In this document: one piece after another, positions 1-63,020 of the stretch
Position numbering within the stretch: the stretch's first letter is position 1
Layout: each line of letters opens with the position of its first letter
DNA from: Hemiscyllium ocellatum
Lineage: Eukaryota
Assembly: GCF_020745735.1 (NCBI RefSeq)
Contig: NC_083435.1
Location: 13,671,201-13,735,200 of the forward strand
Length of the DNA: 64,000 bases
Reading direction: 5' to 3'
Notes under the pieces: generated by a model
What the model saw: only the letters and a program-made list of their open reading frames with translations
Database searches by the model: none
Told to the model about the DNA's origin: nothing
Program-made: the position numbers and the translations under genes

Positions 1-180
1 TAGATTTTTTCAATATGTAACATTTCTCCATCTTCCTTGCACCAAAGTGTATCCCCTCACAATTCTCTGTAATGAACTTGAAGGCCCACCCAACTATCCA
101 CTCCACCAACAGCGTACTATCCTTTCTAAATGCTCCACTGCTGTGCTCATACTTTGAAATTTTCCTGACTTTCGCGTCAA

Positions 181-437
181 CAGAAACTTTGAATTTGTCT
201 CCTGTACATTAAGCCCAAGAAAATTTATTTTTTCATCACACAAGCTTCTGAAGCCAGAAATAGTCGAATGAGCATCTGCTAAATTATTTCTAATGCAATT
301 ATTACCCTTTTTCAATGGACCCATTATTTTCACAACGTCATGGACTGAAGGGGAGTTGCTCTCCCATCTTTTCAGCGAGAATGCTGCTCCATGAAAACAG
401 ACATTACGACTACGGCTCAAAGTGTAGGATTTCATTG
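181..437 (-). pseudogene. Decayed NCR3/NKp30-like V-J exon (copies at about 14197-14454, 28675-28931, 44537-44803)
   Basis: Acceptor ttttag|CA in phase 1. The translation aligns by eye with the V exon at 57133-57474: TLS(C/R) vs TLNC (unit 2 keeps TGT), GAAF-S vs GAAY-W, ENNSP vs DNNP, NNCIRNNLAD vs NNRIFINISD, and VQETNSKF (one base change each from GQGT) vs GNGTKLEV. The A strand is missing and key Cys/Trp residues are lost. Confidence 0.65.
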
Positions 438-679
438 CTAAAACATTAAAAATATTTTAATTTGGAATTGGTCACATCCTCGGAATTTTGTAACCATTAA
501 CAGTATGTACCAAAGCAAGCCATTACCATGGGTGCTAAAATTTGAAAATTTGCATAATGTAACAAATATCCTAGCGTTCACATAGAGGATTGTAATAATT
601 CTCAATTTGTACAAATATCCGAATAATAGTTCAGGAGCTATTCGTTGTGATGGAGCTAGATAGGATAAATTTAACTCAC

Positions 680-752
680 CAATGCAGAGTGCAAAAGAAA
701 CCAGCTGCATAAAGGCAATTCGCTGGATTATCCACATCGTCCATTTGCCCAT
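680..752 (-). pseudogene. Leader (signal peptide) exon MGKWTMWIIQRIAFMQLVSFALCI of the array receptor gene (copies 14697-14767 with a 2-bp deletion, 29174-29246, 5' half only at ~45359-45396)
   Basis: ATG, 24 codons, then G|GTGAGT (phase 1). The last 10 codons MQLVSFALCI|G match MQLIFFPLMV|G of the leader at 62960-63020 in register, with 21/31 identical bases and the same donor. Confidence 0.75.
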
Positions 753-1315
753 AATAAAGATATGCAGTCTTTAAAAGTGTAGCCCCTAAATAAACAGTCT
801 CAATACATGGGCGTGTACGGAATAATTTGTGGTCTATCTTTGTGGGCGTATAGATTTTCTGTCATTGTACTTTGCAGAGGGAAATGGCCCAACCACAAGA
901 TCTTCAAAATAGAGGTCACCAAATAAAATGCCACATTACTAGCTATTTTGGAAATTAAAAAGCAGAGGCAATATTTCAATGTAAATGAACCCTTCGTGCG
1001 GCTGTGTGATTTTGCTGTACACCAATGTTAGGTTTCAATAAATTTCAACATTGTTCGCTGTAAATGGACGGAAACTCACAATCTAGTAGCATTTGGAAGT
1101 GTTCTGACAGTGAGTCAATAAATAAAAACAACTTACTCAGAGGTCCATTCATCGGACTCACAGTCCATGGAAACAAATGTTAAACAGAGCCCACGACAAC
1201 AAAATTGAATTCACTCCTACAGCATTCCAAAAGCAGAAGGTCAAATGCATGCATGTGAACCATTGAAAGGTGGTTTTAGTTAGATCATTAGTTTAATGCT
1301 AAGGTCGACTCTTAG

Positions 1316-8529: not shown

Positions 8530-8697
8530 CTGCAGCTTGCAAGATCGAAACTTAACGTTCCCGTCACAAATTGTGTCAGCATTCCTCCTTGAAGATTCCT
8601 CTCGAAGCCTACTCTAGGAAGATCTTTGCCATCTGTCCTTTGGATAGGCATCGGTTTTGTCTCATTAATATGTTGCGCATCATCATACTTTGTTTCC
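8530..8697 (-). pseudogene. Candidate 168-bp cytoplasmic exon with TKYDD(V/A) motif (copies 22535-22702, 36991-37158, 52475-52642)
   Basis: Acceptor (t)ttaacgcag|G and donor AG|GTATTG or GTTTTG. One frame is open in the copies I translated: ETKYDD(A/V)QHINETKPMPIQRTDGK... Units 2 and 3 read TKYDDV (T-x-Y-x-x-V). Confidence 0.5.
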
Positions 8698-9350
8698 CTG
8701 CGTTAAAAGTGGCAGTACAATGGTAAATTGTTGTGAAATTAAAACGTTTTGGTTTTGCATGCATCCTTTTATGTCCAAGAAAAATCAACTAGTTTCCTGG
8801 AGACTTTTTTCAACAGTTAAATTAATAATATTCAGTTAACTGGCTCAGTAAATGATTTAGCATCTTTTCATTCGTCAGTCCTGCCATCACTGGAATCAAT
8901 GTGGTAAACCTTCAATGCATTCTCAATGCATGAGCATTCCTTAGAAAGGAGGCGGTGACGATGACGTCACCTGGACCAGTAATCTCAAGTTCAACATTAA
9001 TGCTTTAGGAACCATGGCTATTTAAGACCTTTTCACGTTCCCGACTTCTAATAACATTTTAAACCGGCATGTTGTCGGTTGCAGAATGGCAGAAAGAGTA
9101 CAATGAAAGAATTCACGGTTTAATGGCTGCCAAGAGATTAGAAAAAAATGCAAACTTAGACCATTTCCCAACACTTGGAGCCTTGCAAACCATTATTGTA
9201 CCGAAGAATATATGCTCTCAGTAAATTCGGAACAACATCAAATTACACTGATTCAATATCTGTGTGGGTCATTGATTCGGAGCTAATATTTGGTCAGGAC
9301 ACGTGACAGGGCCTACTTTTCCTTCTAAATTGCGTCAACGGGTCATTCAC

Positions 9351-9392
9351 ATCCGCCCCAGAAAGTTAAGTAGAGGCTGCGTTTGAGTTTTC
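9351..9392 (-). pseudogene. Candidate 42-bp juxtamembrane cytoplasmic exon (G)KLKRSLYLTFWGG (copies 23342-23383, 37797-37838)
   Basis: Strong polypyrimidine acceptor ttatttatttttgtcag|GA and donor T|GTGAAT. It is phase 1-1 and in frame with the TM exon, continuing its basic stretch. Confidence 0.5.
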
Positions 9393-9722: not shown

Positions 9723-9833
9723 CTGTAGGTCCCCGCAGCACTCGAACTGTCAAGAATATAATGAGCAGACCTATCAACGTTAGACCGCCGAGTAAAATTG
9801 GTGTAATGTCAGTCTTTGTTTCCACTATGACTC
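9723..9833 (-). pseudogene. Transmembrane exon (G)VIVETKTDITPILLGGL(T/A)LIGLLIIFLTVRVLRG(P/T)T of the array receptor gene (copies 23701-23811, 38157-38267, partial 12676-12772)
   Basis: aattgcag|GA ... ACA G|GTTT(A/G)T; 111 bp, phase 1-1, no stop. About 21 uncharged residues are followed by R-V-L-R. Confidence 0.75.
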
Positions 9834-10097
9834 CTGCAATTAATAGCATGACCACATAGTTTGCGATTCATATTGATAACGACTGACCAATTAAATGACG
9901 CAGTTTCTGTTTTATAAAAAAAATGTTATCAGATCAACGGAACATGATTATTTTGCAGGAAATGGGTGAAGGGAGTTATGGGTCGCGTATTAAAATTTAA
10001 GCTAATTGGCCAAAATAAATTTAAATACACATCGAAAGCGAAAGCCGGTCGGGAAATGGCAACTTGAAGTAAAGGGAATGGCCGCACCATCGCGTAA

Positions 10098-10168
10098 GCG
10101 CCGCTAGTGTAATGGTATCATGCAAGATTCCCATTCTTGCGATCCGGGTTCGATTCCCGGCCGGCGCA
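10098..10168 (+). tRNA. tRNA-Gly(CCC), copy 1; C7:C66 acceptor-stem mismatch and only a TTT terminator
   Basis: GCGCCGC-TA-GTGT-AATGGTA-TCAT-G-CAAGA-TTCCCAT-TCTTG-CGAT-CCGGG-TTCGATT-CCCGG-CCGGCGC-A folds as a cloverleaf and matches the vertebrate Gly-CCC GCGCCGC family as I recall it. Confidence 0.9.
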
Positions 10169-10250
10169 GTGTAGTACTTTATAAAACCAGGAAATATGGG
10201 TTCTGAAGGTCGAAAGCTGCAACTGAAGTCGCTGGTGAAACTCAGCAAAC

Positions 10251-10592
10251 GTCAGAGTCGACATTTCGAGCACTGTGACTCTGCTTTCATTTCACAGGTG
10301 AAGCAGGACCTGCCGAGTTTCGCCAGCAATTCCGGATTTTCTGGACGGTTGAGGAGTGATTTCAATCGCAGAGGCTTGTGAAAGGCAAAAGAGACCCAGC
10401 GTCAGAATAAGGTCAACACTGGAATTCCTTGAGAAGGATCAGTATCAGAAAGGGTTAATGTCAATGGTCAAAACATGGTGGATAAGTGCACTGTTAGGTC
10501 AAGCTAGGAAAAGAGGCAAGTCAAGGAAATGGGTCTTTGTGGGACAACATCAAGGTCAGTTTCTAGTCTTGTGCTTGTCTCCACTAACACCT
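10251..10592 (-). pseudogene. Possible heavily decayed Ig-like exon upstream of the TM exon
   Basis: Acceptor ttcaattgcag. A 342-bp span to a GT carries SLTC, TGA at the Trp position (+16), LRLKSL and FTC (74 codons after the first Cys) in one frame with stops. Other frames give competing readings. Confidence 0.3.
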
Positions 10593-10709
10593 CTGCAATT
10601 GAAATATTTCTCAACACCCTTCGTTTCTTGTGAGTTGCAAATATACTAGTTGGATTCAACAGATCTGCCGGTCATCAGGACAACGTTTTACATACGCTGA
10701 CTGACTTCG

Positions 10710-12675: not shown

Positions 12676-13036
12676 AGCACTCGAACTGTCAAGAATATAA
12701 TGAGCAGACCTATCAACGCCAGACCGCCGAGTAAAATTGGTGTAATGTCAGTCTTTGTTTCCACTATGACTCCTGCAATTAATAGCATGACCACATAGTT
12801 TGCGATTCATATTGATAACGACTGACCAATTAAATGACGCAGTTTCTGTTTTATTAAAAAACAGTTATCAGATCAACGGAACATGATTATTTTGCAGGAA
12901 ATGGGTGAAGGGAGTTATGGGTCGCGTATTAAAATTTAAGCTCATTGGCCAAAATAAAATTAAATACACATCGAAAGCGAAAGCCGGTCGGGAAATGGCA
13001 AATTGAAGTAAAGGAAATGGCAGCCCCAGCGTTTAA

Positions 13037-13107
13037 GCGCCGCTAGTGTAATGGTATCATGCAAGATTCCCATTCTTGCGATCTGGGTTCGATTCCCGGG
13101 CGGCGCA
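13037..13107 (+). tRNA. tRNA-Gly(CCC), copy 2; intact
   Basis: Full cloverleaf with one T50:G64 wobble, CCC anticodon, and a T5 terminator at 13116-13120. Confidence 0.95.
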
Positions 13108-13629: not shown

Positions 13630-14100
13630 GTGTGCATTAGGACCAGCAGTAGGCAATTTTAACCAACCTGTATCAACTCTGACATTTGATAAGACCACAG
13701 CAAATCTGATTATGCGCCCAACCTCACTATCCCAATTTCCATGATGCCCTTTTAAGACTCTTCACCCAGAATCTAACTCAGTCCGAAATAATACAATGTC
13801 ACCACTGCATTCACATCTCTTCAATAGGTGACGCTCAAAATTGTACTCCAGCTGAACTCCAATCATTGTTCTGTGTATGTTCATCATAAAAACCCTGTTT
13901 TGTGGTCTATGAAGTCAAACATGCTGCCTGATTTTTAACAGCTCCCTGCCGCTATCTCCTGCCAATTTTAATGACTGTTATGCATATGCACTCAAGGTCT
14001 CTACTCCTTCGTGCTTTAGATTTTTTCAGTATATAGCATTTCTCCATGTTCCTTGCACCAAAGTGTATCCCCTCACAATTCTCTGTAATGAACTTGAAGG
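13630..14100 (-). mobile_element. Minus-strand CR1 remnants at the unit junction (longer versions at about 27040-28570 and 42890-44430)
   Basis: Minus-strand peptides ENCEGIHFGARNMEK and GEDLIEVYKIVRGID, and an inverted CR1 3' end (catggagtcatacagcacagaaacagaccc) at ~27796. Confidence 0.75.
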
Positions 14101-16684
14101 CCCACCCAACTATCCACTCCACCAACAGCGTACTATCCTTCCTAAGTGCTCCAGTGCTGTGCTCATACTTTGAAATTTTCCTGAATTTCATGTCAACAGA
14201 AACTTTGAATTTGTCTCCTGTACATTAAGGCCAAGAAAATTTATTTTTTCATCACACAAGCTTATGCAGCCAAAAATAGTCGAATAAGCATCTGCTAAAT
14301 TGTTTCTAATGCAGTTATTACCCTTTTTCAATGGACCCACTATTTTTCACAACTTCATGGACTGAAGGGGAGTTGTTCTCCCATCTTTTCAGCGAGAATG
14401 CTGCTCCATGAAAACAGACATTACGAGTACAGCTCAAAGTGTAGGACTTCATTGCTAAAACATTAAAAATATTTTAATTTGGAATTGGTCACATCCTCGG
14501 AATTTTGTAACCGTTAACAGGATGTACCAAAGCAAGCCATGCCCATGGGTGCGAAAATTTGAAAATGTGCATAATTTAACAAATACCCTAAAGTTCACAT
14601 AGAGGATTGCAACAATTCTCATTTTGTACAAATATCCGATTAATAGTTTAGGAGCTATTCGTTGTGATGGAGCTACATAGGATAAATTTAACTCACCAAT
14701 GCAGAGTGCAAAAGAAACCAGCTGCATAAAGGCAATTCGCTATTATCCACATCGTCCATTTGCCCATGATAAAGATATGCAGTCTTTATAAGTGTAGCCC
14801 CTCAATAAACAGTCGCAATACATGGGCGTGTATGGAATAATTTGTGGTCTATTTTTGCGCGCGTATAGACTTTCTGTCATTGTACTTTGCAGAGGGAAAT
14901 GGCCCAACCACAAGATCTCCAAAATAGAGGTCACCAAATAAAATGCCACATTACTAGTTATTTTGGAAATTAAAAAGCAGAGGCAATATTCCAATGCACA
15001 TGAATCTTTCCGGCGGCTGTGTGATTTTGCTGTATACCAATGTTACGTTTCAATAAATTTCAACATTGTTCGCTGTAAATGGACGGAAACCCACATGCTA
15101 GTAGCTTTTAGGAGTGTTCTGACAGTGAGTCAATAAAGAAAAAAAATACTCAGAGGTCCATTCATCGGAATCACAATTCATGAAACAAAATGTTAAACAG
15201 AACCCACGAAAAGAAGGCTGAATTCACTCCTAGAGCATTCCAAAAGCAGAAGGTCAAATGCATGCATGTGAACCATTGAAAGGTGGTTTTCGTTAGATCA
15301 TTAGTTTAATGCTCAGATCGACTCTCAGCGGGGCATGGTGCCTTAGTAACTTAGTGGTTAACCTTGCTACCTCACAGTGCTAGAAACCCGAGCTCAATTC
15401 CAGTCTCGGGCAGTTGCCTCTGTGGAGTTTGCAAGTTCTCCCGTGTCTGCGTGGATTTCCTCCCACCATACAAAGGTGTGCAGGTTATGTGGATTCGCTC
15501 TGCTCAATTGTCCATAGGGTTAGTTGCATTAGTCAGCTGTATATGTAGGGTACGGGAATGGGTCTGGTTATGTTTCTCTTGGAAGGGTCGGTGTGGATTT
15601 GTTGGGCTGAAGGGCCTGTTTCCAATCAGTAAGAAATCTAAACTTACCCAGTTGGCAACAGTCACACTGCTGGTCACTTCAAAATGTCAAGTATGTGACA
15701 ATACCATTCTACAAATAAGACACTATCCTACATTTAAAACAAAATTTTTAACGATAGCGTCTAAATGCACGCAAACTGCTGTTGACTTTCCTGGTGATTA
15801 AATATTTAATTGTACCCGACAGCCACGGCCTCGCTCTGTTATTTTTTTTTTAAGTCGGAGCAATATTAGCTGACACTACCACATTAGCACTGAGTGGTCT
15901 GTGGTCGTTATTCAAAAACTGCTTTTTAAATATTCTTTCATATATCCTGAGTCTCCCTGACAAGACCATAATGAGATTCCCCTCGCAATTCACACTTGAG
16001 CTATGTGGCACTTTTGGATAAATGCAACAACATTTTGAGTCTAAAGCTTCAAATCGACTAGAAGGAGTAAATATGGTACTTTCCTTCAAGTTCTTTCTTT
16101 ATTATGATATATCCATGGTAACTGAGCCTGTGATTAGCTTCAAGTGCATCTCCTATTTAAAAATACAGGTTACATTCCAACAGCTTTCTTGATGAGATTT
16201 GAATGTTAGTATGGACATCTGGTTAACTGGCCCAGTCACACGGTTTTTATGCCAACATCTTCTACAAGAAAAGAAATACAGAGTTTTGACATACCAACGG
16301 TGAGCAATGGCGACATGGTTCCAAGTCAAGATGTTAAGGTGTCTGTCTTGGACAGGGATGGCAGTTATTGGTGTTTGCATGCATTTTCTGCCCTTGCTGT
16401 TCTGGCCAAAGTGCCCTAGTAATTCGCAGCTGTGCGTTTTGCGAATGGTTTTTGTAAAACTCTGTTTCTGTGAACAACCTCCAGCTTCGAAATTAGTACT
16501 TTTGGAATACCCTCAGGGGACATATGTCCTAACATTGACAGATATTGTTTAAAAAAAAACAAATGCTTCATTAATGTCCATCGGGAAACATCTATGATCC
16601 TCAAATGGTCTGTCTACATAGTACTGCACACGTGTAGCAAAGCAAGCAATGCATAACTGCTCTCGAAATGAATTGGCAAGTCTC

Positions 16685-16732
16685 TCAGGTCAAGAGCAAT
16701 GAGAGAATGGCAGCGAATGCGGGCCATCCCAT
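16685..16732 (-). pseudogene. Leader-like mini-ORF MGWPAFAAILSLLLT* upstream of the second V exon
   Basis: ACCATGG context in unit 2 (ATA in units 1 and 3, deleted in unit 4). A hydrophobic run ends at acctgag with no intact donor, about 270 bp from the V-exon acceptor. Confidence 0.4.
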
Positions 16733-19700
16733 GGTACTCAAATCGATGGAAGAATAAATAACAACATGCAGTCATTGACAAAACAAAGTAAAGCAGTATG
16801 AATAAAAAATTATTCACACAGCCAGTGGTCAAGATCTGGAAGGAACTGTCTGAGAGTTGAGGGATCTTCATTCGAATCCATTCAAACATATTGTCACTCT
16901 AGGTTGTAAAACAAAACGTAAGACCTGGACATTGCTGGCTAGCCAGCATTGATTGCCCATCCCTAATTGCCCTTGAGAATGCAGCAGTGATCTGCCTTAC
17001 GGAACCGCTATTGTCCATATACTGTAGCTAGACTCATAATACATGAAGGAGGGAGTTCCAGGATTTCGAACAGGGACAGTGAAAGAACAATGTCATATTC
17101 CCAAGTCAGGACGGTGTGTAGCTTGGAAGGAAACATCCAGGTGGTGGCGTTAACATGTAACTGCTGCCTTTGTGCTTCTTGAAGTAAGTGGTCATGGTGT
17201 GGAAGCTGCTGTTTAAAGATCTTGGGTGACTTTCTGCAGGGCATCTTGTAGCTAATACATATTAGAGCTACTGAGTGGTGAAGCATCGGTATGGATATAG
17301 TGAATGTGCTGCCAATCAAGTGAGACGTTTTGCCCTGAAATGTTGGTAGTGACGGAATCAGCAATGGCAATGCCGTTGAATGCCTTAGGGGTGGTGGTTC
17401 GACTGTCTGTTATTGGAGGTGGTCACTGCCTGGCAATTATGTTGTGCAGTTGTTACCTGGCACCTCTTGCTCCATGCTTGGATATTGAAAAGATTTTGTT
17501 GCATTTGGACATGGACTACTGAGTCACGAATGGTGATACCATTGGTGAACATTCCCACGTCTGACCTTATAATGGAGGGAAGGTCATTGATGAAGCCATT
17601 GAAGTGGTAGGGCCTGGAATACTAACCTGAGGAACTCCAGCAGATATGACCTAGAATTGAAACAATTGACCTTCAACAACTACAGTTTTGAACCGAGTGG
17701 CGAGGAGAGAGGGTGGAGAGGAGTGAGGGCTGCCGGGAAGTTTTTAAGTGAGATCTGGTGTCTGGCATTCAACCTGGCACTGAGGCTCAGAAAGGAAGGT
17801 GGGTGGGGGAGAATAGAAAAGCGCTAATGATAGGGGACTCAATCGTTAGACGGATTGACAGGATATTTTGTGGTCAGGAACGGGACTCTCTGAAGGGATG
17901 TTGACTTCCCAGTGACAGGGTCTGGGATATCGCCGATCGGGTTTACAGGATTCTGAAGGGGGAGGGTGAGCAGCCAAAAATCGTGGCACAGATACATCCA
18001 GAAAAGGAATTCAGGATCTGAAAAGTGACTACAGAGAGCTAGGCTGGAAGGTGAAGAGTAGGACGAATAGAGTAGTGTACTCAAGTTTGCAACTGGTGCC
18101 ACGAAACAGTGAGGGGAGGAACAGTCAGCAAGTGTAGCTTAACACGTGGTTGGGAAGCTGGTGCAGGATGGAGGGTTTCAGATACTTAGACCATTGGGAT
18201 GCCTTCTGGGGAAGTTGGGGCCTATACAAGCAGGACCAGTTGCACCTGAATTGGAGGGGCACAAATGTCCTGGGTGGGAGATTTGTCTGTGTGGTTTGGG
18301 ATTGTTTAAACTAGTTTGGCAAGGGGGTGGGAACCAGAGCTACTTATCTGAGAGGGAGTAGTTGCAGATGGGGAAGTGACAGGATGTTGTGAATCTATCA
18401 GGAAGGTTTTCCATGTGATGAAACATAGGGATCATTTAAAGTGTAGCTGCTTTTACGCGAAGAGTGTCAGAAATAAGAGTGATGAACGTTGAGTACAGAT
18501 CAGTACTTGGGCCTATCATGTTGTGGCCATAACGGAGACATGTGTTTCACAGTGGCAGGAATGGTTGATAGATGTTCCAGGGTTTAGAGCGTTAAAAAGA
18601 ACAAGGAGCGTGGAAAAATAGGAGGGGGTGTAGCATTGCTAATCAGAGGGCTCATCACAGCTACAGAAACGAAGGATGTTGAGGAAGGTTTGTCTACTGA
18701 GTCAGTATGGGTGTACGTTAGGAACAGCAAGGGAGCAGCCACATGATTGAGTTTTTTTTCTTCTAAAGAGCCCCAAATAGAAGTAAGGAGATTGAAGAAC
18801 TCATAGGTCGACAGATTTTGGGGAAATGCGGATGTAGATAGGGGAAACCATAAATGAGTTTTTTGCTTCAGTTTTCACGAAGAAAAGGGATCTTGTTGAA
18901 AATGAGCAATTTAAGGAGCTGGGTTATGAACTAGAACAGATCATGATGATGAAGCTGAAGTGCTGAGAAGTTTGACAAACATTAGGATTAATACGTCCCC
19001 AGGCCAGACCAGATTTATCTTAGGTTGCTTCAGGAAAAGAGAATGGCGGTTGCTAAGCTGATGCCGAATATCTTTGTTCCCTCACTCTCACTGGGAGTCG
19101 TACCGGAGGATTAGAAGGAGGCGAATGTTGTTCCTCTTTTCAAGAAGGGGGAATAGGGAAATCCCCGACAGTTACAGACCAGTCAGCCTTACGTCTGTGG
19201 TCAGCAAGGTTTTGGAAAGAATTCGGAGGGATAGGATCTATGACTATGTGGAAAAGCATAGAGTGATTAAATGCAGTCAGCATGGCTGCGTGAGGGGCAG
19301 GTCATGCCTAACTAATCTTATTGAGTTCGTTCAGGCAGTGACAGGACAGGTCAATGAAGGTCATGCAGTGGATGTGGTGTATATGGACTTCAGCAAGGCT
19401 TTTGATAATGTTCCCCATGATGGACTCATTCGAAATGTCAGGAGGTGTGGGATACAGGGAGATTTGGCTGCCTGGATTCAGAATTGGTTGGCCGACAGAA
19501 GGCAAAGAGTGGTTGTAGATAGAAAGTATTCTGTCTGAATGTCAGTAGTGAGTGGTGCTCCGCAGGGCTCTATTTTTAGATCTCTGCTGTTTGTAGGTTT
19601 TCTAAATAACTTGGATGAGGAGGTTGAGGTGTTGGTTAGTAAATTTGCCGATGATGCAAAGGTTGAAGGTGCCATTGATAGCATTGAGGGCTATTGCAGT

Positions 19701-22700
19701 CTGTAGCGCAAGACAGACTGGATGCAGAGCTGGGCAGAGAAATAGCAGATGGAGTTCAACCTGGATAAATGCGAAATGGTACATTTTGGAAGGTCGAACT
19801 TGAAAGCTGGATATAGGATTAAAGACAAGGTTCTTGGCAGCGTGGAGAAACAGAGGGATCTTGACGTTCAAGTGCATAGATCCCTCAAAGTTGCCACCCA
19901 AGTGGACAGGGTGGTTAAGAAAGCATATGGTGTTTTGGCTTTCATTAACGGGGGATCGAGTTTAAGAGCTGCAAGATTTTGCTGCAACTCTACAAGACTC
20001 TCGTGTGACCACAGTTGGAATATTGTGTTCAGTTCTGGTCCCCATATTATAGGAAAGATACAGAGAATTTGGAAAGGATGTAAAGAAGGTTTACCCGGAT
20101 GCTACCTGGAGTTGAGAGCTTGTCTTATGAAGAGAGGCTGCCTAAGCTCAGACTTTTCTCTCTGGAGAGAAGGAGGAAGAGACGTGACCTAATCGAGTTA
20201 TCCAAGATAATGAGAGGCTTGGATAGAGTCAATAGCCAGAGACTTTTTTCCCCAGGGCAGGATTGACTCGCACGAGGGGTAATTGTTTTAAGATAATAGA
20301 AGGAAGGCACAGTGGAGATGTCAGAGATAGGTTCTTTATGCCGAGAGTTGTGGATGCCAGCGGTGATGGTTTAAGCAGAGTCATTAGGGACACTTAAGCG
20401 CCTGCTAGACATTCATATGGACAGCAGTGAATTGAGGGGGTGCATATGTTCGGTTATTTTATTTTAGACTAGGAATATCCTCAACACAACATCGTGGGAC
20501 GAAGGGTCTGTTCTGCGCTGTACTTTTCTACATTCTATGTTCTATGTTCTAACCATCTACCAACCAGCAGAGAGTTTACCTCATGAGTGCCATAAATTTC
20601 AGTTTGCTCTGGCTCCTTGATCAAAGTCAAATGCGGCCATGATGTCAAGGGTTGTCACTCTCACTTGATCTCTGGGATTCATTTCTTTTCTCCATGGTTG
20701 ACCCAAAGTTGTTATGAGGTCGGGAGCTGAGTGACCCTGGTGGAATTCAAACTGGGCATCAGTGAGAAGGTTGTTGCTAAGTAAGTGATCCGTGATGGCA
20801 CTGTCTTCCATCTCTTTGCTAATGATTGGGAGGAGAGTGGTGATGCAGTGAAATGACTCAGTTGGATGTGTCCTGCTTTTCGTGTACAGGATAAAATCTG
20901 GACAATTATCGACATTGTTGGGTAGAGTCAGTGTTATACCTGCACTGCTGCAGATTGGCTGGGAGAGTAACACATTCTGAGGCACAAGTCATCTGTATTA
21001 TTATGGAATTGCGTCGGGGTCCATAATCTTTGCAGTGCCAATGTCTCCAAATGTTTCTTGATATCCTATGGAGCAAATCTAAGTGAACACTGACATCTGC
21101 GATGCTGGTGGCCACTGGTGGAGACCCAGTTGGATTATCCAATCAGCACATATGGCTGACGACGTTTACGATTGTTTCAGATATACCTAATGCACTGGCG
21201 TGTAGGACTTTTCTATCAATGAGAATTGAGACATATTTGAAAGCTCTTCCCCCAATGAGTTGTTCAATTCAAGACTGGATATGACAGATCTGCAGGGATT
21301 TGAAATGAAACAATGAAAGGTTAACGACAGAAAACCGGAAAGAAAAAAATGAAACGCTCGTGCGGAGAACACGTGTGAATGCCGTTGCTCGAGTGGTCTT
21401 CTTCAATTCTGCAGTTTTTGCATGATCGTAAAGCCCTTGCATTTGTAGTTCGACTACGTCAATGGATTGCAAGATCCTGCCTATGACGCCTCACCAAAAT
21501 ACTGCTGTGTCTGTGTATTTAGCATGTGACGTCACCAGATGGCGCTGGTGGCTTTTTTTTTGATAGAGTGATAAATATGTATTTTCTATCGAATTTTCCG
21601 GAGGCCTCATTGAATGCATTTCAAACAGGTGGAACAATAGAATTATGCTTTGTGGCTTAGCGACAGGGAACCTGTCACTGTGCCGCAAGGACACAAACTC
21701 CTCGTTCTATTTTATTTGATCAATCTGTTCGTGTATGTTATTAAAGACCTCTGAAATATGCGAGATTTGAGTTCAGGCCTCGTGCCTTAGTCGTTGCACC
21801 ACAAGGGCCATTATGCTCCTCACTGTAGCGTCTCCCATCCATTCATCTTCAGCTCCTTGAACAAATACCGTGCCTCCATCATAAGGTCAGAAGTGGAGAT
21901 GTTCATTCAGCATCATAGTCTAGCACTACTCATGATTCCTCAGCTACTGAGTAGACCACGCGCAAATGCAGGGCGACCTGGAAAATACCAAGGTTTGGTC
22001 CAACAAATAAAGAGGGACGCTCAGACCACACAAGGTCAAAGCAATGACTGTCGCCAACAAGAGAGAAACGCTGCTGGACATGCAACGGCCTTGCTACTAA
22101 TGAATCCCTGCTATCAACATCCGATGGATTATCATCGATCAGAAGCCAAACTAGGAGGAATAATAATCTGCTCGATTTTTGCACTCACCTAAATGTGCGT
22201 TGGTCCAAACGCGTTTATCAAAGCTGGAGCGCCGAAACAAAAGAACAAGAGAAGACTAGCAGATCACTAAAGTTTCATTGTTCTAAATTATTTCATCATT
22301 CTAAGGTCGCGTTACTTCTGCTGATTGGGGGAGAGATGAGAAGGTGAACTTCATGTGACTTTCGGATGGAGAGTTTGTGTAAGAAATGTGCAATCCAGGC
22401 ATGAACATTACCTTAACTATAAAGTTGCAATCATCTTGTTTCAACTGCTGCCGGCCTACTCAAATATTCTACAAGCTTCCATCAGTAGCCGCTTGGTTAT
22501 TGTACGTCCTTCCTCCTACAGTTGGTAGCAAAACCTGCAGCTTGCAAGATCGAAACTTAACGCTCCCGTCACAAATTGTGTCAGCATTCCTCCTTGAAGT
22601 TTTGTCTCGAAGCCTACTCTAGGAAGCTCTTTGCCATCTGTCCTTTGGATAGGCATCGGTTTTGCCTCATTAATATGTTGCACATCATCATACTTTGTTT

Positions 22701-24068
22701 CCCTGCGTTAAATGTGGCTGTACAATGCGAAATTGTTGTGAAATTAAACGTTTTGGTTTTGCATACATCCTTTTATGGCAAAGAAAAATCAACTGGTTAC
22801 CTGGAGACTTTATTCAACAGTTAAATTAATAATATTCAGTTAAATGGCTTAGTAAGTGATTTAGTGTCTTTTCATTCGTCAGTCCTGCCATCACTGGAAT
22901 CAATGCATTCTCAATGCATAAGCATCCCTGAGAAGGGAGGCGGTGACGTTGACGTCACCTGGACCAGTAATCTCAAGTTCAACCTTAATGCTTTAGGAAC
23001 CAGGGCTATTTAAGATTTTGTTACTTTCCCGACTTCTAATAACATTTTAAACCGGCATGTTGTCGGTTGCAGAATGGCAGAAAGGGTACAATGAAAGAAC
23101 TCACGGTTGAATGGCAGCCAGGAGATTAGAAAAAAAAACACAAACCTAGACCATTTCGCAACCCTTGGACCCTTGCAAACCACTATTGTACCGAAGAAAA
23201 TATGCTCTCAGTAAATTCGGATCAACATCAAAGTTACACTGAGCCAATCTCTGTGTGAGTCATTGATTCAGGGCTAATATTTGGTCAGGACACGTGGCAA
23301 GGCCTGGTTTTCCTTCGAAATTTCGTCAACGGATAATTCACATCCGCCGCAGAAAGTTAAGTAGAGGCTGCGTTTGAGTTTTCCTCTGAAAAATAAATAA
23401 GTAATTCCGACAGCGCGGACTTTTGTCAGTACCGCCCGCTTCGATCTTTGTGGTCTTGAATCTCGAGCCCTGGGATTTCAAGAAATGCACGCTAAACAGA
23501 GCGACAACCCACTGCAAGCTTGGAACGAGCCCAGCTGCATTCACGTCTTGCTCTCTACCCGTCTGCCTTAACTAGTTCGACACTTTTCAGAGGCACTCAT
23601 TGAAATGGTGCCAAATAGGAAGATCGTCCCTAAATCAATTACGTATCTGGATTAGGATACTGCATGATCAGGTTTGCTTACGTGCAGCGAAAATACAAAC
23701 CTGTAGTTCCCCGCAGCACTCGAACTGTCAAGAATATAATGAGCAGACCTATCAACGCCAGATCGCCGAGTAAAATTGGTGTAATGTCAGTCTTTGTTTC
23801 CACTATGACTAATGCAATTAATAGCATGACCACATCGTTTGCGATTCATATTGATAACGACTGACCAATTAAATGCCGCTGTTTCTGTTTTCAAAAAATA
23901 TATTATCAGATCAACAGAACATGATTATTTTCCAGGGTGAAGGGAGTTATGGGTCGCGTATTAAAATTTAAGCTAATTGACCAAAATAAAATTAAATACA
24001 CATCGAAAGCGAAAGCCGGTCGGGGAATGGCAACTTGAAGTAAAGGGAATGGCCGCCCCATCGCGTAA

Positions 24069-24140
24069 GCGCCGCTAGTGTAATGGTAGTCATGCAAGAT
24101 TCTCATTCTTGCGATCCGGGTTCGATTCCCCGGCGGCGCA
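24069..24140 (+). tRNA. tRNA-Gly-derived gene with anticodon CTC (Glu), copy 3; functionality uncertain
   Basis: Anticodon arm CAAGA-TTCTCAT-TCTTG, one extra G in the D loop, C50:C64 T-stem mismatch, intact acceptor stem, and a long T-run terminator. Confidence 0.8.
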
Positions 24141-38524: not shown

Positions 38525-38595
38525 GCGCCGCTAGTGTAATGGTATCATGCAAGATTCCCATTCTTGCGATCTGGGTTCGATTCCCGGGCGGCGCA
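38525..38595 (+). tRNA. tRNA-Gly(CCC), copy 4; intact and identical to copy 2
   Basis: Same 71-nt sequence as 13037-13107, with a T5 terminator at 38605-38609. Confidence 0.95.
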
Positions 38596-39230
38596 GTGTA
38601 GCACTTTTTAAAACCAGGAAATATGGGTTCTGAAGGTCGAAAGCTGCAACTGAAGTCGCTGGTGAAACTCAGCAAACGTCAAAGTTGACATTTCGAGGAC
38701 TGTGACTGCTTTCATCTCACAGGTGAACCAGGACCTGCCGAGTTTCGCCAGCAATTCCTGATTTTTTGGAAGACTGGGGAGTGATTTCAATCGCAGAGGC
38801 TTGTGAAAGGCAAAAGAGACCCAGCGTCAGAATAAGGTCAACACTGGAATTCCTTGAAAAGGATCAGTATCAGAAAGGGTTCATGTCAAAGGTCAAAACA
38901 TGGTGGATAGGTGCACTGTTAGGTCAAGCTAAGAAAAGAGGCAAGTCAAGGAAAAGGGTCTCTGTGTGACAACATCAAGATCAGTTTCTAGTCTTGTGCT
39001 TGTCTCCACTGATACCTCTGCAATTGAAATATTTCTCAACACCCTTCTTTTCTTGTGAGTTGCAAATAAACTAGTTGGACCTCAACAGATCTGCCGGTCA
39101 TCAGGACAATATTTTACATACGCTGACTGACTTCGGGGATCAGTGAAGAAAAAAAGCTTCACATAAATCCCCAGGACCTGATCAAGTGTACCCGAGAACT
39201 CTGTGAGAAACTAAGGAGGTGATTCCTTTG

Positions 39231-42603: not shown

Positions 42604-44863
42604 CTGTAGTTATAAAGTAAGAAAACAGAAATACAACACCATATGGATAGTTTTTAATTCCACTAAATTTATAATTCATGGTAACTACTTGCATATCAAA
42701 ATTGGGGAAATTGAGAATGGCAAACCTGAGCTCTCTATTTTGTAAATTATTTATTGACATTGACCATAATTCGTTTGTGTATTTTAATACCAAATTGATA
42801 CAGATTTAACACGGGAAATAAACGGGCCTTCTGTTTTGTACTTTCAAGGTGAATGATATGGCTCTCCTTTCATTTTATTTCATTTGAATGTGTGCATTCG
42901 GACCAGCAATAGGCAATTTTAACCAACCTGCATCAACTCTGACATTTGATAAGACCACGGCAAATCTGATTGTGCGCCCAACCTCACTATCCTAATTTCC
43001 ATGATGCCCTTTTAAGAGTCTTCACCCAGAATCTAACTCAGTCCGAAATAATGCAATGTCACCACTGCCCGCTGGATCAGAAAAACATGCAGATTAACAG
43101 CTGTTTGATAGAATAGAATTCTTCTCAACATCATTTTGAAAATTTGATCCCTCATGTTTCTTCTTAATATGTCCCCAAGTTTTAGAAAGGGAAACTTCTT
43201 CTCTACATCTAAATCATCAAATCCCTTAGAACCGTGTATGTTTACATGAGATTATATTACATGACTCGAAACGGCAATGAGTATATCGATAACTTGCCCA
43301 GATTTCATAGAATCTCAGAATTGTAAGCGTGTGGAGAAATACCATTAATTCATCATAGCTGTACTCTTTCTTTAAGCATTTGAACTTAAAGTCATACTCC
43401 TGCCTTTCCCACACATACCTGCACACCTTGTTATTTAAACAATCATCCAGTGCCCTCTTGAATGCTCAACTGAACTTCCCTCAACTACTCAGCTTGTGAA
43501 GAATAGTTTTTTTTTTCTAACCTTGCATTTGCTTGTATCACCGAACACTTTAAACCTATGCCTTCTCAGACTCAATAAATTTCCACATGGGAACACTTTC
43601 GCACGATGAACTCTGTTCAGAAGCCTCAAAGACTTATGGAGTCATGGAATCATGCAGCACAAAAACAGACCCTTTGATCATACCAATCAATACCGAACAT
43701 AAACCCAAACTAAACTAATCCAACCTTCTTGCTCATGGCCCATATCCCTCCAAACCTTTCTCATAATCCAAATGTATTTTAAACATTGTAAATCACTCAT
43801 ATCCACTACTGCCTCAGGAACTTCATTCCACATGCGAACCATCTTCTCCGCAAACAGAAATACCCGTCATGGCCTTTTTAAACCTCTCTCCTCTCACTTT
43901 AAAAATGTGCGCCCAGTCTTGAACTCCCCATCCAGTGGATAAAAAGCAATTACCATCTATACCCCTCACTATTTTATAAACTTCTATAAGGTCTGCTCTC
44001 AATCTTCTACATGACTTCGAAACGTCTATGAAATCTACACTTAGCCTTTTTGACTCCAAGGAAATTAAGATCATCATCACAAATCTTTCCACAAAATTAA
44101 GTTTCCCATTCCATTCTTCTCAACCTCCTCTGCACACTTTCCGAAGCATTCACATCTCTTCAATAGGTGACGCTCAGAATTATACTCCAGCTGAACTTCA
44201 ATCATTGATCTGTGTATGTTCATCATAAATTCCCTGTTTTTGTGCTCTATGAAGTCAAACTTACTGCTTGATGTTTTAACAGCTCCCTGCCGCTATCTCC
44301 TGCCAATTTTAATGACTGCTATGCATATGCACTCAAGTTCTCTACTCCTTCGTGCTTTAGATTTTTCAATATATAACATTTCTCCATGTTCCTTGCACCA
44401 AAGTGTATCCCCTCACAATTCTCTGTAATGAACTTGAAGGCCCACCCAACTATCCACTCCACCAACAGCGTACTATCCTTTCTAAGTGCTCCACTGCTGT
44501 GCTCATACTTCGCAATTTTCCTGAATTTCGTGTCAACAGAAACTTTGAATTTGTCTCCTGTACATTAAGGCCAAGAAAATTTATTTTTTCACCACACAAC
44601 TTCTGCAGCCAAAAATAGTCGAATGAGCATCTGCTAAATTGTTTCTAATGCAGTTATTACCCTTTTGCAATGGACCCACTACTTTTCACAACTTCATGGA
44701 CTGAAGGGGGGGGGGGGGCGGTTCCTCTCCCACCTTTTCAGCGAGAATGCTGCTCCATGAAAACAGACATTACGACTACGGCTCAAAGTGTAGGATTTCA
44801 TTGCTAAAACATAAAAATGTTTTTAATTTGGAATTGGTCACATCAGCGCGATTTCGTAGTTAA

Positions 44864-44934
44864 GCGCCGTTAGTGTAATGGTATCATGCAAGATGCCCAT
44901 TCTTGTGATCTGGGTTCGATTCCCATGCGGCGCA
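44864..44934 (+). tRNA. tRNA-Gly(CCC)-derived copy 5; probable pseudogene
   Basis: Anticodon loop TGCCCAT (invariant U33 changed to G), C49:T65 mismatch, T7:G66 wobble, and a T6 terminator at 44941-44946. Confidence 0.8.
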
Positions 44935-47900
44935 GTGCCGTTTTTTAAAACCAGGAGTATGGGTTCTGAAGGTCGTAAACCAAAACTGAAGTCGCTGGTG
45001 AAATTCAGCAAACGTCAGAGTCGATATTTCGAGGACTGTGACTCTGCTTTCATCTCACAGGTGAAGCAGGACCTGCCGAGTTTCGCCAGCAATTCTTGAT
45101 TTTTTGGAAGATTGGGGAGTGATTTCAATCGCAGAGGCTTGTGAAAGGCAAAAGAGACCCAGAGTCAGAGTAAGGACAACACTGGAATTCCTTGAAAAGG
45201 ATCAGTATCAGAAAGGGATAATGTCAAAGGTCAAAACATGGTGGATAGGTGCACTGTTAGGTCAAGCTGGGAAAAGAGGCAAGTAAAGGAAAAGGGTCTC
45301 TGTGTGACAACATCAAGATCAGTTTCTAGTCTTGAGCTCGCCTCCACTAACACCTCTGGCAATTCGCTGGATTATCCACATCGTCCATTTGCTCATGATA
45401 AAGATATGCAGTCTTTAAAAGTGTAGCCCCGAAATAAACAGTCTCAATACATGGGCGTGTACGGAATAATTTGTGGTCTATCTTTGTGGGCGTACAGAGT
45501 TTCTGTCATTGTACTTTGCAGAGAGAAATGGCCCAACCACAAGATCTCCAAGATAGAGGTCACCAAGTAAAATGCCACATTACTAGTTATTTTGGAAATT
45601 AAAAAGCAGAAGCAATATTTCAATGCAAATGAATCTTTCGTGCGGCTGTGTGATTTTGCTGTGCACCAATGTTACGTTTCAATAAATTTCAACATTGTTC
45701 GCTGTAAATGGACGGAAACCCACATACTAGCAGCTTTTAGGAGTGTTCTGACAGTGAGAGAATAAATAAAAACAACTTACTCAGAGGTCCATTCACCGGA
45801 CTCACAATTCATGGAAAAAAATGTTAAACAGAACCCACGAAAAGAAGGCTGAATTCACTCCTACAGCATTCCAAAAGCAGAAGGTCAAATGCATGCATGT
45901 GAACCATTGAAAGGTGGTTTTAGTTAGATCATTAGTTTAATGCTAAGGTCGACTCTTCGGGGGGCATGGTGCCTTAGTGACTTAGTGGTTAACCTTGCTA
46001 CCTCACAGTACTAGAAACCCGGGTTCAATTCCGACCTCGGGCAGTTGCCTCTGTGGAGTTTGCAAGTTCTCCCGTGTCTGCGTGGATTTCCTCCCACCAT
46101 ACAAAGATGTGCAGGTTATGTGGATTAACTCTGCTCAATTGTCTATAGGGTTAGTTGCATTAGTCAGCTGTATATGTTGGATACGGGAATGGGTCTGGGT
46201 GTGTTTCTGTTGGGAGGGTCGGTGTGGATTTGTTGGGCCGAAGGGCCTGTTTCCAATCAGTAAGAAATCTAAACTTACCCAGTTGGCAACAGTAACATTG
46301 CTGGTCACTTTAAAATGTCAAGCATGTGACAACACCATTCTACAAATAAGACACCAACCGAGATTACAAACAAAATCTTTAACGATTGTGTCTGAATGCA
46401 CGCAAACTGCTGTTGACTTTCCTGGTGATTAAATATTTAATTGTACCCGACAGCCAAGGCCTCGCTCTGTTAATTATTGTTTTTAAGTCGGAGCAATATT
46501 AGCTGACACTACCACGTGAAAATGTAAATTTGCACTGAGTGGTCTGTGGTTGTTTTTCAAAAACTGCTTTTTAAACATTCTTTCATACATCCTGAGTCTC
46601 TCTGACAAGACCATAATGAGATTCCCCTCACAATTCACACTTGAGCTATGTGGCGCTTTTGAATAAGTGCAACAACATTTTCAGTCTCAAGCTTCAAGTC
46701 GACTAGAAGGAGTAAATATGATACTTTCCTACAAGTTCTTTCTTTATTATGATATATCCATGGTAACTGAGCCTGTGATTAGCTTCAAGTCCATCTCTTT
46801 TTTTAAAAATACAATTTACATTGATGGGATTTGAGTGTGAGTATGGGCATCTGGTTAACTGGCCCAGTCACACGGTTTTTATGCCAACATCTTCTACAAG
46901 AAAAGAAATACAGAGTTTTGACATACCAACGGTGAGCAATGGCGACATGGTTCCAAGTCAAGATGTTAAGGTGTCTGTCTTGGACAGGGATGGCAGCTCT
47001 TGGTGTTTGCATGCATTTTCTGCCCTTGCTGTTCTGACCAAAGTGCCCTAGTAATTCGCAGCTGTGCGTTTTGCGAATGGTTTTTGTAAAACTCTGATTC
47101 TGTGAACAACCTCCAGCTTCGAAAGTAGTACTTTTGGAATACCCTCAGGGGACATATGTCCTAACATTGACAGATATTGTTTAAAAAAAACATATGATTC
47201 ATTAATATCCTTTGTGCTTCTTAATGGAAGTGGTCATGGCAAGGAAGCTGCTGTTTAAAGATCTTGGGTGACTTTCTGCAGGGCATCTTGTAGCTAATAC
47301 ATACTGGAGCTACTGAGTGGTGAAGCATCGGTATGGATGTTAGTGAATGTTCTGCTAATCAAGTGAGACGTTTTGCCCTGAAATGTTGGTAGTGATGGAA
47401 TCAGCGATGGCAATGCCGTTGAATGCCTTTTGCTCTATGCTTGTATATTGAAAAGACTTAGTTGCATTTGGACATGGACTACTTGAGTCACGAATGGTGA
47501 TATCACTTGTGAACATTCCCACGTCTGACCTCATAATGGAGGGAAGGTCATTGATGAAGCAATTGAAGTGGTAGGGCCTGGAATACTAACCTGAGGAACT
47601 CCAGCAGATATGACCTAGAATTGAAACAATTGACCTTCAACAACTACAGTTTTGAACAGAGTGGCGAGGAGAGAGGGTAGAGAGGAGTGAGGGCTGCCGG
47701 GAAGTTTTTAAGTGGGTGAGATCTGGTGTCTGGCATTCAACCTGGCACTGAGGCTCAGAAAGGAAGGTGGGGGGTGCGGAGGGGGAACAGAAAAGCGCTA
47801 ATGGTAAGGGACTCAATCGTTAGACGGATTGACAGGATATTTTGTGGACAGGAATGGGACTCTCGGAAGGGATGTTGACTCCCCAGTGACAGGGTCTGGG

Positions 47901-57132: not shown

Positions 57133-57474
57133 GCTTCACCTCCAGTTTGGTGCCGTTTCCATGTCCTTTCCCTGCTCCAACTACAGTTATATGACAGTAA
57201 TAAGTGTCCGAGTCTTTCTCAGTCAAGTCGGAGATATTAATGAAGATCCTGTTGTTGGCAAATGAATCACTGTCTGATGTCTGCACCCGAGCTTCATAAA
57301 GGGGGTTATTATCCAATTTGTACCCATCCAGATTGCCCCGTGTCCAATAAGCTGCACCAATCAGAGATAGAGTTCCTTCAAAATCCAAGGCACAGTTCAG
57401 CGTCACCGACTGCCCCTCTGTTGCAGTTATTAATGGAGGGAACTGGAAGACAGTGACGTTCATCTTCGTACCCA
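57133..57474 (-). CDS. NCR3: NCR3/NKp30-like receptor exon 2: germline-joined V-J Ig domain (113 codons)
   Basis: tttcctatcag|TG ... AAG C|GTAAGT; 342 bp, phase 1-1. Motifs are EGQSVTLNC, IGAAYW, DSDTYYC and VVGAGKGHGNGTKLEV (cf. human NKp30 EGSSAFLPC, IGSVTW, VLGLGVGTGNGTRLVV). The symbol denotes family membership, not proven orthology. Confidence 0.9.
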
Positions 57475-62959: not shown

Positions 62960-63020
62960 CAACCATTAGTGGAAAGAAAATGAGCTGCATTGTCATAAAT
63001 TGCCAAATTAAAGTCATCAT
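62960..63020 (-). CDS. NCR3: NCR3-like receptor exon 1: signal peptide MMTLIWQFMTMQLIFFPLMV
   Basis: ATG, 20 hydrophobic codons, then G|GTGAGT. Phase 1 joins TG of the V exon (Val) in frame. Confidence 0.75.

What the first reader, a model, noticed from the sequence alone, without database searches (positions are those of the whole stretch)
181..752. The 'unique' DNA of the repeat unit hides a decayed leader plus V-J exon pair homologous to the flanking NCR3-like gene
The leader ends MQLVSFALCI|G|GTGAGT versus MQLIFFPLMV|G|GTGAGT. A 242-bp intron leads to an exon that keeps TLSC, GAAF, ENNSP, NNCIRNNLAD and a GQGT-derived VQET in the same order as the intact V exon. About 29 codons are missing. 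The ORF track alone gives no hint of this, so automated annotation would likely miss it.
Basis: partly seen in the sequence, partly recalled or inferred. Interest (0 to 1): 0.8.

Follow-up and report, generated by a model that had tools for sequence, protein, structure and literature searches.

The report
Orphan NCR3-type leader exon, no V exon
Each 14-kb repeat unit beside a shark NKp30/NCR3-like immune-receptor gene carries a believable leftover signal-peptide (leader) exon of that gene family, but the piece next to it that was read as a decayed V-J exon looks no more like a V domain than shuffled sequence does, so this is an ordinary gene relic.

Summary
The window is shark DNA, about 92% identical to a Chiloscyllium punctatum contig. 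It holds four tandem ~14-kb units (1-52798), mostly LINE/SINE, next to one intact NCR3-like V-J exon (57133-57474, minus strand).

The quoted strings exist, with two caveats. TLSC and ENNSP are found only in unit 2, and by parsimony both are recent unit-2 mutations. In units 2 and 4 NNCIRNNLAD lies in a different frame from TLS./GAAF.

The leader half holds. An unbiased scan with the flanking 37-mer gives 10 mismatches at the three unit leaders and 15 at the next-best site in 128 kb. All leaders share a 58-nt, 19-codon, phase-1 layout. A 25-nt motif ~75 nt upstream recurs at the same offset before a C. punctatum NCR3-like paralogue.

- Smith-Waterman z is -0.8 to +1.3 against shuffles.
- DNA alignment is no better than background.
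- Pfam V-set, a family HMM run with --max, and PDB sequences give no V hit; hhalign probability is 0.25%.
- A search of 1.84 billion proteins returns only repeat-inflated artefacts.

"Exon 2" diverges as fast as its flanks (5.9% against 6.6%; synonymous:nonsynonymous 5:11). It is frameshifted in units 2 and 4.

Best reading: an orphan NCR3-type 5' end followed by non-V DNA. No RNA data were available. Interest is low.

The parts
811..835 (-). 25-nt upstream motif AGACCACAAATTATTCCGTACACGC, 74 nt before the leader ATG. It occurs once per unit (also 14826-14850, 29305-29329, 45455-45479). It contains a RUNX-like core, GACCACA.
   Evidence: 4 matches, 0 expected from shuffles; it matches L002 9959-9983, 78 nt before the leader ATG of C. 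punctatum chiPu_0012135. In an unbiased scan this was the top hit in the window (z 7.3 and 5.3). The RUNX reading is my inference and was not tested.
680..737 (-). Leader-like exon of unit 1: 58 nt, 19 codons (MWIIQRIAFMQLVSFALCI) plus a split G, phase 1. Copies: unit 3 at 29174-29231; unit 2 at about 14697-14752, with a 2-nt deletion between the two ATGs. Absent from unit 4.
   Evidence: 27 of 37 nt are identical to the flanking leader, against a next-best site of 22 of 37. The 64-mer has 25 mismatches, against 31 at the next-best site.
674..679 (-). Intact GTGAGT splice-donor consensus after the leader exon.
   Evidence: Identical in units 1-3.
438..673 (-). Rest of the 242-nt intron-like spacer, ending in ttttag.
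   Evidence: It has no significant similarity to the flanking gene's intron 1 (z 1.7-2.2, rank 44-111 of 1252).
153..437 (-). It is open only in units 1 and 3. Copies: unit 2 at 14169-14454 (frameshift and TGA), unit 3 at 28647-28931, unit 4 at about 44510-44803 (10-nt poly-C insertion plus two 1-nt indels). No V-set signal was detectable.
44845..45357 (-). Unit 4: a replacement of the leader 3' part and intron by a copy of the 10095-10600 element, which carries a tRNA-like SINE.
62960..63017 (-). Candidate leader exon of the flanking gene (MTLIWQFMTMQLIFFPLMV plus a split G, then GTGAGT). It lies 5.4 kb upstream of the intact V exon. Its splicing to that exon is inferred, not shown.
   Evidence: It is conserved in C. 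punctatum at L001 4399, as is all the flanking DNA.
57133..57474 (-). Intact NCR3/NKp30-like V-J exon of the flanking gene, used as the comparator.
   Evidence: Pfam V-set, E 4.4e-11; 90% identical to C. punctatum chiPu_0012136, which UniRef names natural cytotoxicity triggering receptor 3; acceptor and donor.

Best explanation
Each 14-kb tandem unit carries the orphaned 5' end of an NCR3/NKp30-like receptor gene. This end consists of a promoter-proximal motif, a 58-nt signal-peptide (leader) exon that ends in phase 1, and an intact GTGAGT donor. It was copied along when the unit was amplified.

The 264-285 nt that follow 242 nt downstream are not a recognisable V-J exon. They are most likely non-coding DNA, either former intron or unrelated sequence, that happens to begin after an AG. 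In units 1 and 3 they happen to be open because a 1-nt deletion in an A-run fused two frames.

The relic is not under coding constraint and probably makes no protein.

Shown: the similarity of the leader and of the upstream motif, the absence of V signal, neutral divergence, and the frameshifts.
Inferred: common ancestry of the leader with NCR3-like leaders, non-function, and that the 62960-63017 exon really is the leader of the intact V exon.
For: Leader:
- A scan of both strands with the flanking 37-mer finds 10 mismatches at exactly the three unit leaders, on the gene's strand. The next-best site has 15.
- The 64-mer has 25 mismatches against 31 at the next-best site.
- An in-frame ATG lies 27 nt upstream in the same register. 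That gives the same 19-codon, 58-nt exon as the annotated leader of C. punctatum chiPu_0012135.

Upstream motif:
- The 200 nt before that C. punctatum leader find their best window-wide match just upstream of the unit leaders (z 7.3 and 5.3). The offset is the same: 74 nt against 78 nt before the ATG.

No V signal in 'exon 2':
- Smith-Waterman against the intact V: z -0.3 to -0.8.
- Best of five family members, including a frameshift-corrected unit-2 composite: z no higher than 1.3.
- DNA Smith-Waterman ranks 72nd to 918th of about 1000 tiles.
- tblastn finds nothing. Pfam V-set finds nothing at E up to 10.
- The family HMM, run with --max on all six frames with stops as X, finds nothing there.
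- hhalign probability is 0.25%.
- PDB sequences give no Ig chain at E up to 10.
- The ESM recognition value is below the level that 91 in 100 real proteins reach and 9 in 100 shuffled ones do.
- phmmer against 1.84 billion representatives gives only repeat-summed artefacts.
- Probes for the J/donor, acceptor and YYC regions are at background.

Neutrality:
- Unit 1 against unit 2 differs by 16/269 in 'exon 2', 16/242 in the intron and 4/63 upstream.
- Synonymous:nonsynonymous counts are 5:11 and 5:10.
- There are frameshifts in units 2 and 4 and a stop in unit 2.
Against: - The layout is what an IgSF receptor gene would show: a leader, a short intron, then a segment that is phase 1 at both ends in the open copies.
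- A hydrophobic ORF with a phase-1-compatible AG lies downstream at 9833-9723, with copies in other units.
- Unit 2 shows a Cys, then Trp 16 residues later, then a further Cys. That pattern has about a 2% chance per 90 residues, although the first Cys appears to be derived.
- The leader similarity covers only 37 nt, seven of which are splice-donor consensus. Neither the promoter nor the intron of the flanking gene aligns.
- If the flanking 'leader' was itself picked for its likeness to the unit leaders, the 37-mer statistic is weaker than it looks.
- No RNA data were available for either gene.
Confidence: 0.6

Rival explanations
1. The segment 153-437 really is the V-J exon of an old NCR3-like paralogue. 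It has lost about 26-29 codons and has decayed beyond what alignment can detect.
For: - Its position and phase directly after an NCR3-type leader.
- Colinear short motifs.
- C|GAAAGT at 174 sits where AAGC|GTAAGT ends the intact exon.
- The Cys-16-Trp spacing in unit 2 equals that of the intact V.
Against: - Every statistical test is at background.
- A leader at 73% identity is hard to reconcile with uniform neutral decay. By my estimate, on the +5/-4 scoring, the V exon would have to be below about 52% DNA identity to stay undetected. A binomial calculation then gives p of about 0.007 for 27 of 37 matches in the leader.
- TLSC and ENNSP are derived unit-2 mutations.
- Leader introns in the two real genes are 2.6 kb and 5.4 kb, not 242 nt.
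Confidence: 0.17
2. Nothing here descends from NCR3. The leader resemblance would be chance plus shared signal-peptide and donor constraints, and the whole stretch would be ordinary intergenic DNA.
For: - The similarity is confined to 37 nt that include ATG and GGTGAGT.
- Hydrophobic coding is T-rich, which raises chance matches.
- An all-against-all comparison inside 128 kb would yield some 27/37 pairs by chance (my estimate).
- The flanking promoter and intron do not align.
Against: - The scan was directed, and the hit is the unique best, on the gene's strand.
- There is an in-register upstream ATG and the same 58-nt exon length as an annotated paralogue leader.
- An independent colinear upstream motif is shared with that paralogue.
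Confidence: 0.13
3. Units 1 and 3 encode a live, lineage-specific type I membrane protein. It would combine an NCR3-type promoter and leader, a novel 95-residue non-Ig ectodomain exon (437-153) and the TM-like exon.
For: - The frame is open in units 1 and 3, with candidate splice sites in phase 1 at both ends.
- The TM-like ORF has a compatible acceptor.
Against: - By parsimony the open frame arose from a 1-nt deletion.
- Substitutions are neutral (5:11), and the other units are broken.
- No protein among 1.84 billion representatives resembles it.
- The ESM recognition value is below the level that 91 in 100 real proteins reach and 9 in 100 shuffled ones do.
- AlphaFold2 gives a mean pLDDT of 37.9.
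- No RNA run holds the stretch.
- About 1.5 stop-free stretches of this length or longer are expected by chance per unit (my estimate).
Confidence: 0.05

Closest known systems
NCR3 / NKp30 family genes of cartilaginous fish: non-rearranging, MHC-linked genes whose V and J segments lie in a single exon. PMC12227049 cites Flajnik 2012 and the nurse shark NCR3 genes MT914154-914161.
   Same: - The flanking gene is a clear member: V-set domain, GNGTKLEV J motif, 62-90% identical to proteins that UniRef names NCR3.
- The unit's leader exon shares the length, phase, donor and central MQL[IV] block.
- An upstream motif is shared with family members.
   Different: - The unit has no detectable V-J exon.
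- Its TM-like ORF is unrelated in sequence to the flanking gene's Arg-containing TM candidate.
- There is no evidence of expression.
Truncated or processed-out pseudogene fragments ('orphan' leader or 5' exons) in multigene immune-receptor clusters such as Ig/TCR V relics and KIR/LILR fragments. This comparison is from my general knowledge.
   Same: A 5' fragment of a receptor gene is carried passively inside a segmental or tandem duplication. It evolves neutrally and carries frameshifts and TE insertions.
   Different: Here the fragment is embedded in a TE-rich 14-kb unit amplified about fourfold, and the donor site and ATGs are still intact in three copies.

Membership tests
Immunoglobulin V-set domain (Pfam PF07686), for segment 153-437 | A significant match to the V-set profile | tested here: not met
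   no Pfam family at E up to 10, while the intact exon scores 4.4e-11; no Ig chain among PDB sequences at E up to 10.
Shark NCR3/NKp30-like V-J exon, for segment 153-437 | Similarity to family V-J domains above shuffled controls, at the protein, profile or DNA level | tested here: not met
   z -0.8 to +1.3; hhalign probability 0.25%; the family HMM run with --max gives no hit in any frame. DNA alignment and probes at background.
Shark NCR3/NKp30-like V-J exon, for segment 153-437 | The Cys23 / Trp41 / Cys104 triad and a G-x-G-T J motif | tested here: not met
The first Cys is present only in unit 2 (TGT against CGT elsewhere), so it appears to be derived.
NCR3-like gene 5' end (leader exon), for 680-737 | A 19-codon, 58-nt signal-peptide exon that ends in phase 1 at a GT donor, with sequence similarity to family leaders | tested here: met
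   the unique best hit; the same length and register as the chiPu_0012135 leader.
NCR3-like gene 5' end (leader exon), for 680-737 | Spliced to a V exon in mRNA | not testable with these tools
Functional protein-coding exon (any family), for 153-437 | Purifying selection and a frame kept open among copies | tested here: not met
   divergence equals that of the flanks; synonymous:nonsynonymous 5:11 and 5:10; frameshifts in units 2 and 4 and a stop in unit 2.

The most novel reading that the evidence does not exclude
In units 1 and 3, a 1-nt deletion fused two frames into a 95-codon symmetrical exon behind a still-intact NCR3-type promoter motif, leader and donor. This would be a candidate birth of a new non-Ig ectodomain on an immune-receptor chassis, if it is transcribed and spliced to the TM-like exon.
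Probability: 0.04. Interest if true: 0.5.

Novelty: new member of a known kind. Interest (0 to 1): 0.15.

Why it matters
The consequences are small. The result adds an orphan NCR3-type leader, with a shared upstream motif, to the picture of a shark NCR3 cluster. It also shows that the tandem array beside the intact gene is not a set of recognisable V-bearing paralogues.

This weakens any reading of the array as a 'paired receptor' family. It also warns against calling V-J relics from short colinear motifs. The shared 25-nt upstream motif may be a usable handle on NCR3-like promoters.

Tried and rejected
- phmmer hits P0005-P0008 looked significant. They are long internally repetitive proteins: one from a metagenome, one from a tick, one TPR protein and one of unknown source. 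Their scores sum many weak repeats, each single repeat having a pairwise E near 1e-5. I rejected them as artefacts.
- Weak V-like blips at 7972-7910 and 7605-7555 on the minus strand (tblastn E 0.3-1.4; family HMM E 3.8-5). They are not reproduced in the other units and are full of stops. Rejected as chance.
- A 17-nt exact match of the chiPu_0012135 leader core at 13650-13634 (E 0.019). It has no ATG or donor. Left as unexplained.
- AlphaFold2 on the unit-1 reading, single sequence: mean pLDDT 37.9, uninformative. I did not run a fold search on it.
- RNA evidence. No run on record as RNA holds the relic or the intact V exon.
- Cross-species check of the relic. The C. punctatum contig runs into an assembly gap (L001 17305-20339, all N) exactly where the array continues.
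- The look-up of encoding contigs for the S. canicula protein P0003 found no record.
- Kinlein 2021 and Flajnik 2012 are not held in the paper library.
- Cytoplasmic-exon candidates at 8530-9392: nothing convincing appeared in any frame.

Full report
**Context**

The window is shark DNA. The region 50149-63998 aligns colinearly at 91-93% identity to Chiloscyllium punctatum contig BEZZ01000537.1.

Positions 1-52798 are about 3.8 tandem copies of a ~14-kb unit, 90-99% identical to each other. The units are largely LINE reverse-transcriptase fragments and tRNA-derived SINEs.

One intact V-J exon lies on the minus strand at 57133-57474:
- Pfam V-set gives E 4.4e-11.
- It carries the motifs GNGTKLEV and DSDTYYC.
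- It is 90% identical to chiPu_0012136 and 62-76% identical to other shark proteins that UniRef names natural cytotoxicity triggering receptor 3.

**The observation**

On the minus strand, unit 1 reads ATG CAG CTG GTT TCT TTT GCA CTC TGC ATT G|GTGAGT, with the ATG at 710 and the donor at 679-674. The flanking site at 62990 reads MQLIFFPLMV-G|GTGAGT.

The donor-to-acceptor distance is 242 nt (679-438, ending in ttttag). The following frame contains GAAF, NNCIRNNLAD and VQET.

- Units 1, 3 and 4 read TLSR and ES(N/R)SP. Only unit 2 reads TLSC and ENNSP.
- The Cys codon is TGT in unit 2 against CGT in the other three, a CpG transition. The Asn codon is AAC against AGC/AGG. Units 1 and 3 are near-identical here and count as one lineage. 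With three roughly equidistant lineages (1/3, 2 and 4), parsimony makes both unit-2 residues derived.
- Units 2 and 4 share an extra A (GTGAAAAAT). By the same logic this is the ancestral state. In the ancestor, TLS./GAAF/.NSP and NNCIRNNLAD/VQET therefore lay in different frames, and the open 95-codon frame of units 1 and 3 is a derived fusion.
- Unit 2 also has a TGA. Unit 4 has a 10-nt poly-C insertion and a further 1-nt deletion.
- Unit 4 has lost the leader 3' part and the intron to a 513-nt replacement that bears a tRNA-like SINE.

**The leader is real**

I scanned both strands of the window, ungapped, with the flanking 37-mer (ATG to GTGAGT).
- The three unit leaders have 10 mismatches each. 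The next-best site anywhere has 15.
- By my binomial estimate, about 1e-3 such hits are expected by chance in 128 kb.
- Extending to 64 nt gives 25 mismatches, against 31 at the next-best site.

Both sequences have an in-frame ATG 27 nt further upstream. That gives 19 codons plus a split G: MTLIWQFMTMQLIFFPLMV in the flanking gene and MWIIQRIAFMQLVSFALCI in the units. This is exactly the 58-nt exon of the annotated leader of the C. punctatum paralogue chiPu_0012135, MVFRQLLVLMLSISFPRSA.

There is an independent second line of evidence. The 200 nt upstream of that C. punctatum leader find their best match in the whole window immediately upstream of the unit leaders, with z of 7.3 for unit 2 and 5.3 for units 1 and 4.
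- The match is a 25-nt motif, AGACCACAAATTATTCCGTACACGC.
- It is present once per unit.
- It lies 74 nt before the ATG in the units and 78 nt before it in C. punctatum.
- The score alone is only borderline: 3 of 20 shuffled queries reached 32 or more. The location is what carries the weight, since only about 8 of 1276 tiles lie just upstream of a unit leader.
- The core GACCACA resembles a RUNX site. That is my inference and was not tested.

Caveats on the leader:
- The similarity to the flanking gene is confined to the 37 nt. Neither the 200 nt upstream nor the first 250 nt of the intron align above background.
- That the 62960-63017 exon is spliced to the V exon 5.4 kb away is inferred, not shown.

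**The V-J exon is not supported**

That is what I found.

| Test | Result |
|---|---|
| Smith-Waterman, BLOSUM62, unit-1 translation against intact V | z -0.31 to -0.84 over four gap settings |
| Best of five family members, including a frameshift-corrected unit-2 composite with X at the break | z -0.2 to +1.3; 11-57% of shuffles do as well |
| DNA Smith-Waterman, V exon plus flanks against all 500-nt tiles, both strands | the four copies rank 72nd to 918th under three scoring schemes |
| tblastn of the V domain against the window | no alignment there beyond a 9-residue, E=202 fragment in a different register |
| Pfam V-set | nothing at E up to 10 |
| HMM of the five family V domains, --max, six frames, stops as X | nothing at the locus |
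| hhalign, family profile against the translation | probability 0.25% |
| phmmer against PDB sequences, which include thousands of V domains | no Ig chain at E up to 10 |
| 32-36-nt probes for J/donor, acceptor and YYC regions | best matches in the expected zones rank 256th, 3625th and 7867th of 128,000 positions |
| ESM Atlas | recognition value 1985; 91 in 100 real proteins reach 2300, 9 in 100 shuffled ones do |
| AlphaFold2, single sequence | mean pLDDT 37.9, uninformative |

Exhaustive phmmer against 1.84 billion representatives gave four hits. All are long, internally repetitive proteins whose scores add up many weak repeats. One is from a metagenome, one from a tick, one is a TPR protein and one is of unknown source. 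None is Ig-like. The same search means that no gene model represented in that library contains this segment.

A loose hallmark pattern (h-x-h-x-C, then W 14-18 residues later, then a further C) is met only by unit 2. It occurs 28 times in the window's six-frame translation, about 2% per 90 residues.

**Constraint**

Between units 1 and 2 the segment differs at 16/269 sites. The intron differs at 16/242, the upstream region at 4/63 and the downstream region at 3/69. Synonymous:nonsynonymous counts are 5:11 for units 1-2 and 5:10 for units 1-4, close to the roughly 1:3 I would expect under neutrality. Together with the frameshifts and the stop, nothing points to coding selection since the units diverged.

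**Consistency argument**

Suppose the segment were a neutrally decayed copy of the same gene as the leader. A V exon at 60% DNA identity or more would then score far above background on the +5/-4 scoring (my estimate). To remain invisible it must be at about 52% or less. At that level, 27 of 37 matches in the leader has a binomial p of about 0.007 (my calculation).

So either the leader has been preserved or refreshed separately, or the segment is not the V exon. The leader introns of the two real genes are 2.6 kb in chiPu_0012135 and 5.4 kb in the flanking gene, not 242 nt. The family HMM finds no V remnant anywhere else in the unit either.

- Position.
- Phase 1 at the acceptor, and phase 1 again at a possible A|GTATGA donor at 152.
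- C|GAAAGT at 174, where the intact exon ends in C|GTAAGT.
- A hydrophobic ORF, VIVETKTDITPILLGG(L/D)..LIGLLIIFLTVRVL. It follows a phase-compatible AG at 9833, 12772 and 38267; at 23811 the acceptor is mutated to AT. Its similarity to NCR3-like TM regions is only marginal (p 0.01-0.04 against shuffles). It also sits at the edge of a duplicated SINE-bearing element.

**Verdict**

The stretch 181-752 holds a credible orphan NCR3-type leader exon with an upstream motif. It is followed by DNA with no demonstrable V-J ancestry that evolves neutrally.

My probabilities:
- Orphan 5' end plus non-V DNA: about 0.6.
- Undetectably decayed V exon: about 0.17.
- Pure chance: about 0.13.
- Live novel gene: about 0.05.

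RNA evidence could not be obtained. The orthologous array in C. punctatum lies in an assembly gap.

Noticed in passing
window 9723-9833 (-), 12757-12772 region (-), 23811 (-), 38267 (-): A hydrophobic TM-like ORF, VIVETKTDITPILLGGL.LIGLLIIFLTVRVL. It follows a phase-1-compatible AG, which is mutated to AT in unit 2, and is open in all four copies found. It lies at the edge of a ~550-bp internally duplicated element that also carries a tRNA-like SINE, so it may be repeat-borne rather than a true exon. Its similarity to NCR3-like TM regions is only marginal.
   Followed up: partly
window 54768-54896 (-): A candidate TM exon of the intact gene: RKINISNCVELKTALSFVLRTTIILLVFILVILLICKLEYKCNG. It has a good acceptor (catttcag) and donor (GTAAGT), is in phase with the V exon, and has an Arg inside the hydrophobic span, as in activating NKp30.
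   Followed up: partly
window 10098-10168, 13037-13107, 24069-24140, 38525-38595, 44864-44934 (+): Five Rfam tRNA hits (43-60 bits), all inside copies of one repeated ~500-bp element. They are probably tRNA-derived SINE heads rather than tRNA genes.
   Followed up: no
L001 17305-20339 (C. punctatum BEZZ01000537.1): The C. punctatum assembly breaks into a run of N about 3 kb into the first repeat unit. At least one unit predates the species split, but the copy number there is unknown.
   Followed up: no
window 13634-13650 (-): A 17-nt exact match (CTGCTGGTCCTAATGC core) to the leader exon of C. punctatum chiPu_0012135, about 550 nt downstream of unit 2's 'exon 2'. It has no ATG or donor, and BLAST E is 0.019. 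It could be a second leader scrap or chance.
   Followed up: partly
window 1-1305 vs 28495-29799; 15356-24780 vs 29797-39230: The units are mosaics. Unit 3 is 99% identical to unit 1 over the leader region but 96.9% identical to unit 2 over the next 9.4 kb. This points to unequal crossing-over or gene conversion within the array.
   Followed up: no
window 57475-57514 (-): An in-frame Met, MEFIIYHVIIFLSV, runs straight into the V exon across its acceptor. In principle it could serve as an intron-less signal peptide, an alternative to the leader 5.4 kb upstream. RNA data are needed to decide.
   Followed up: no
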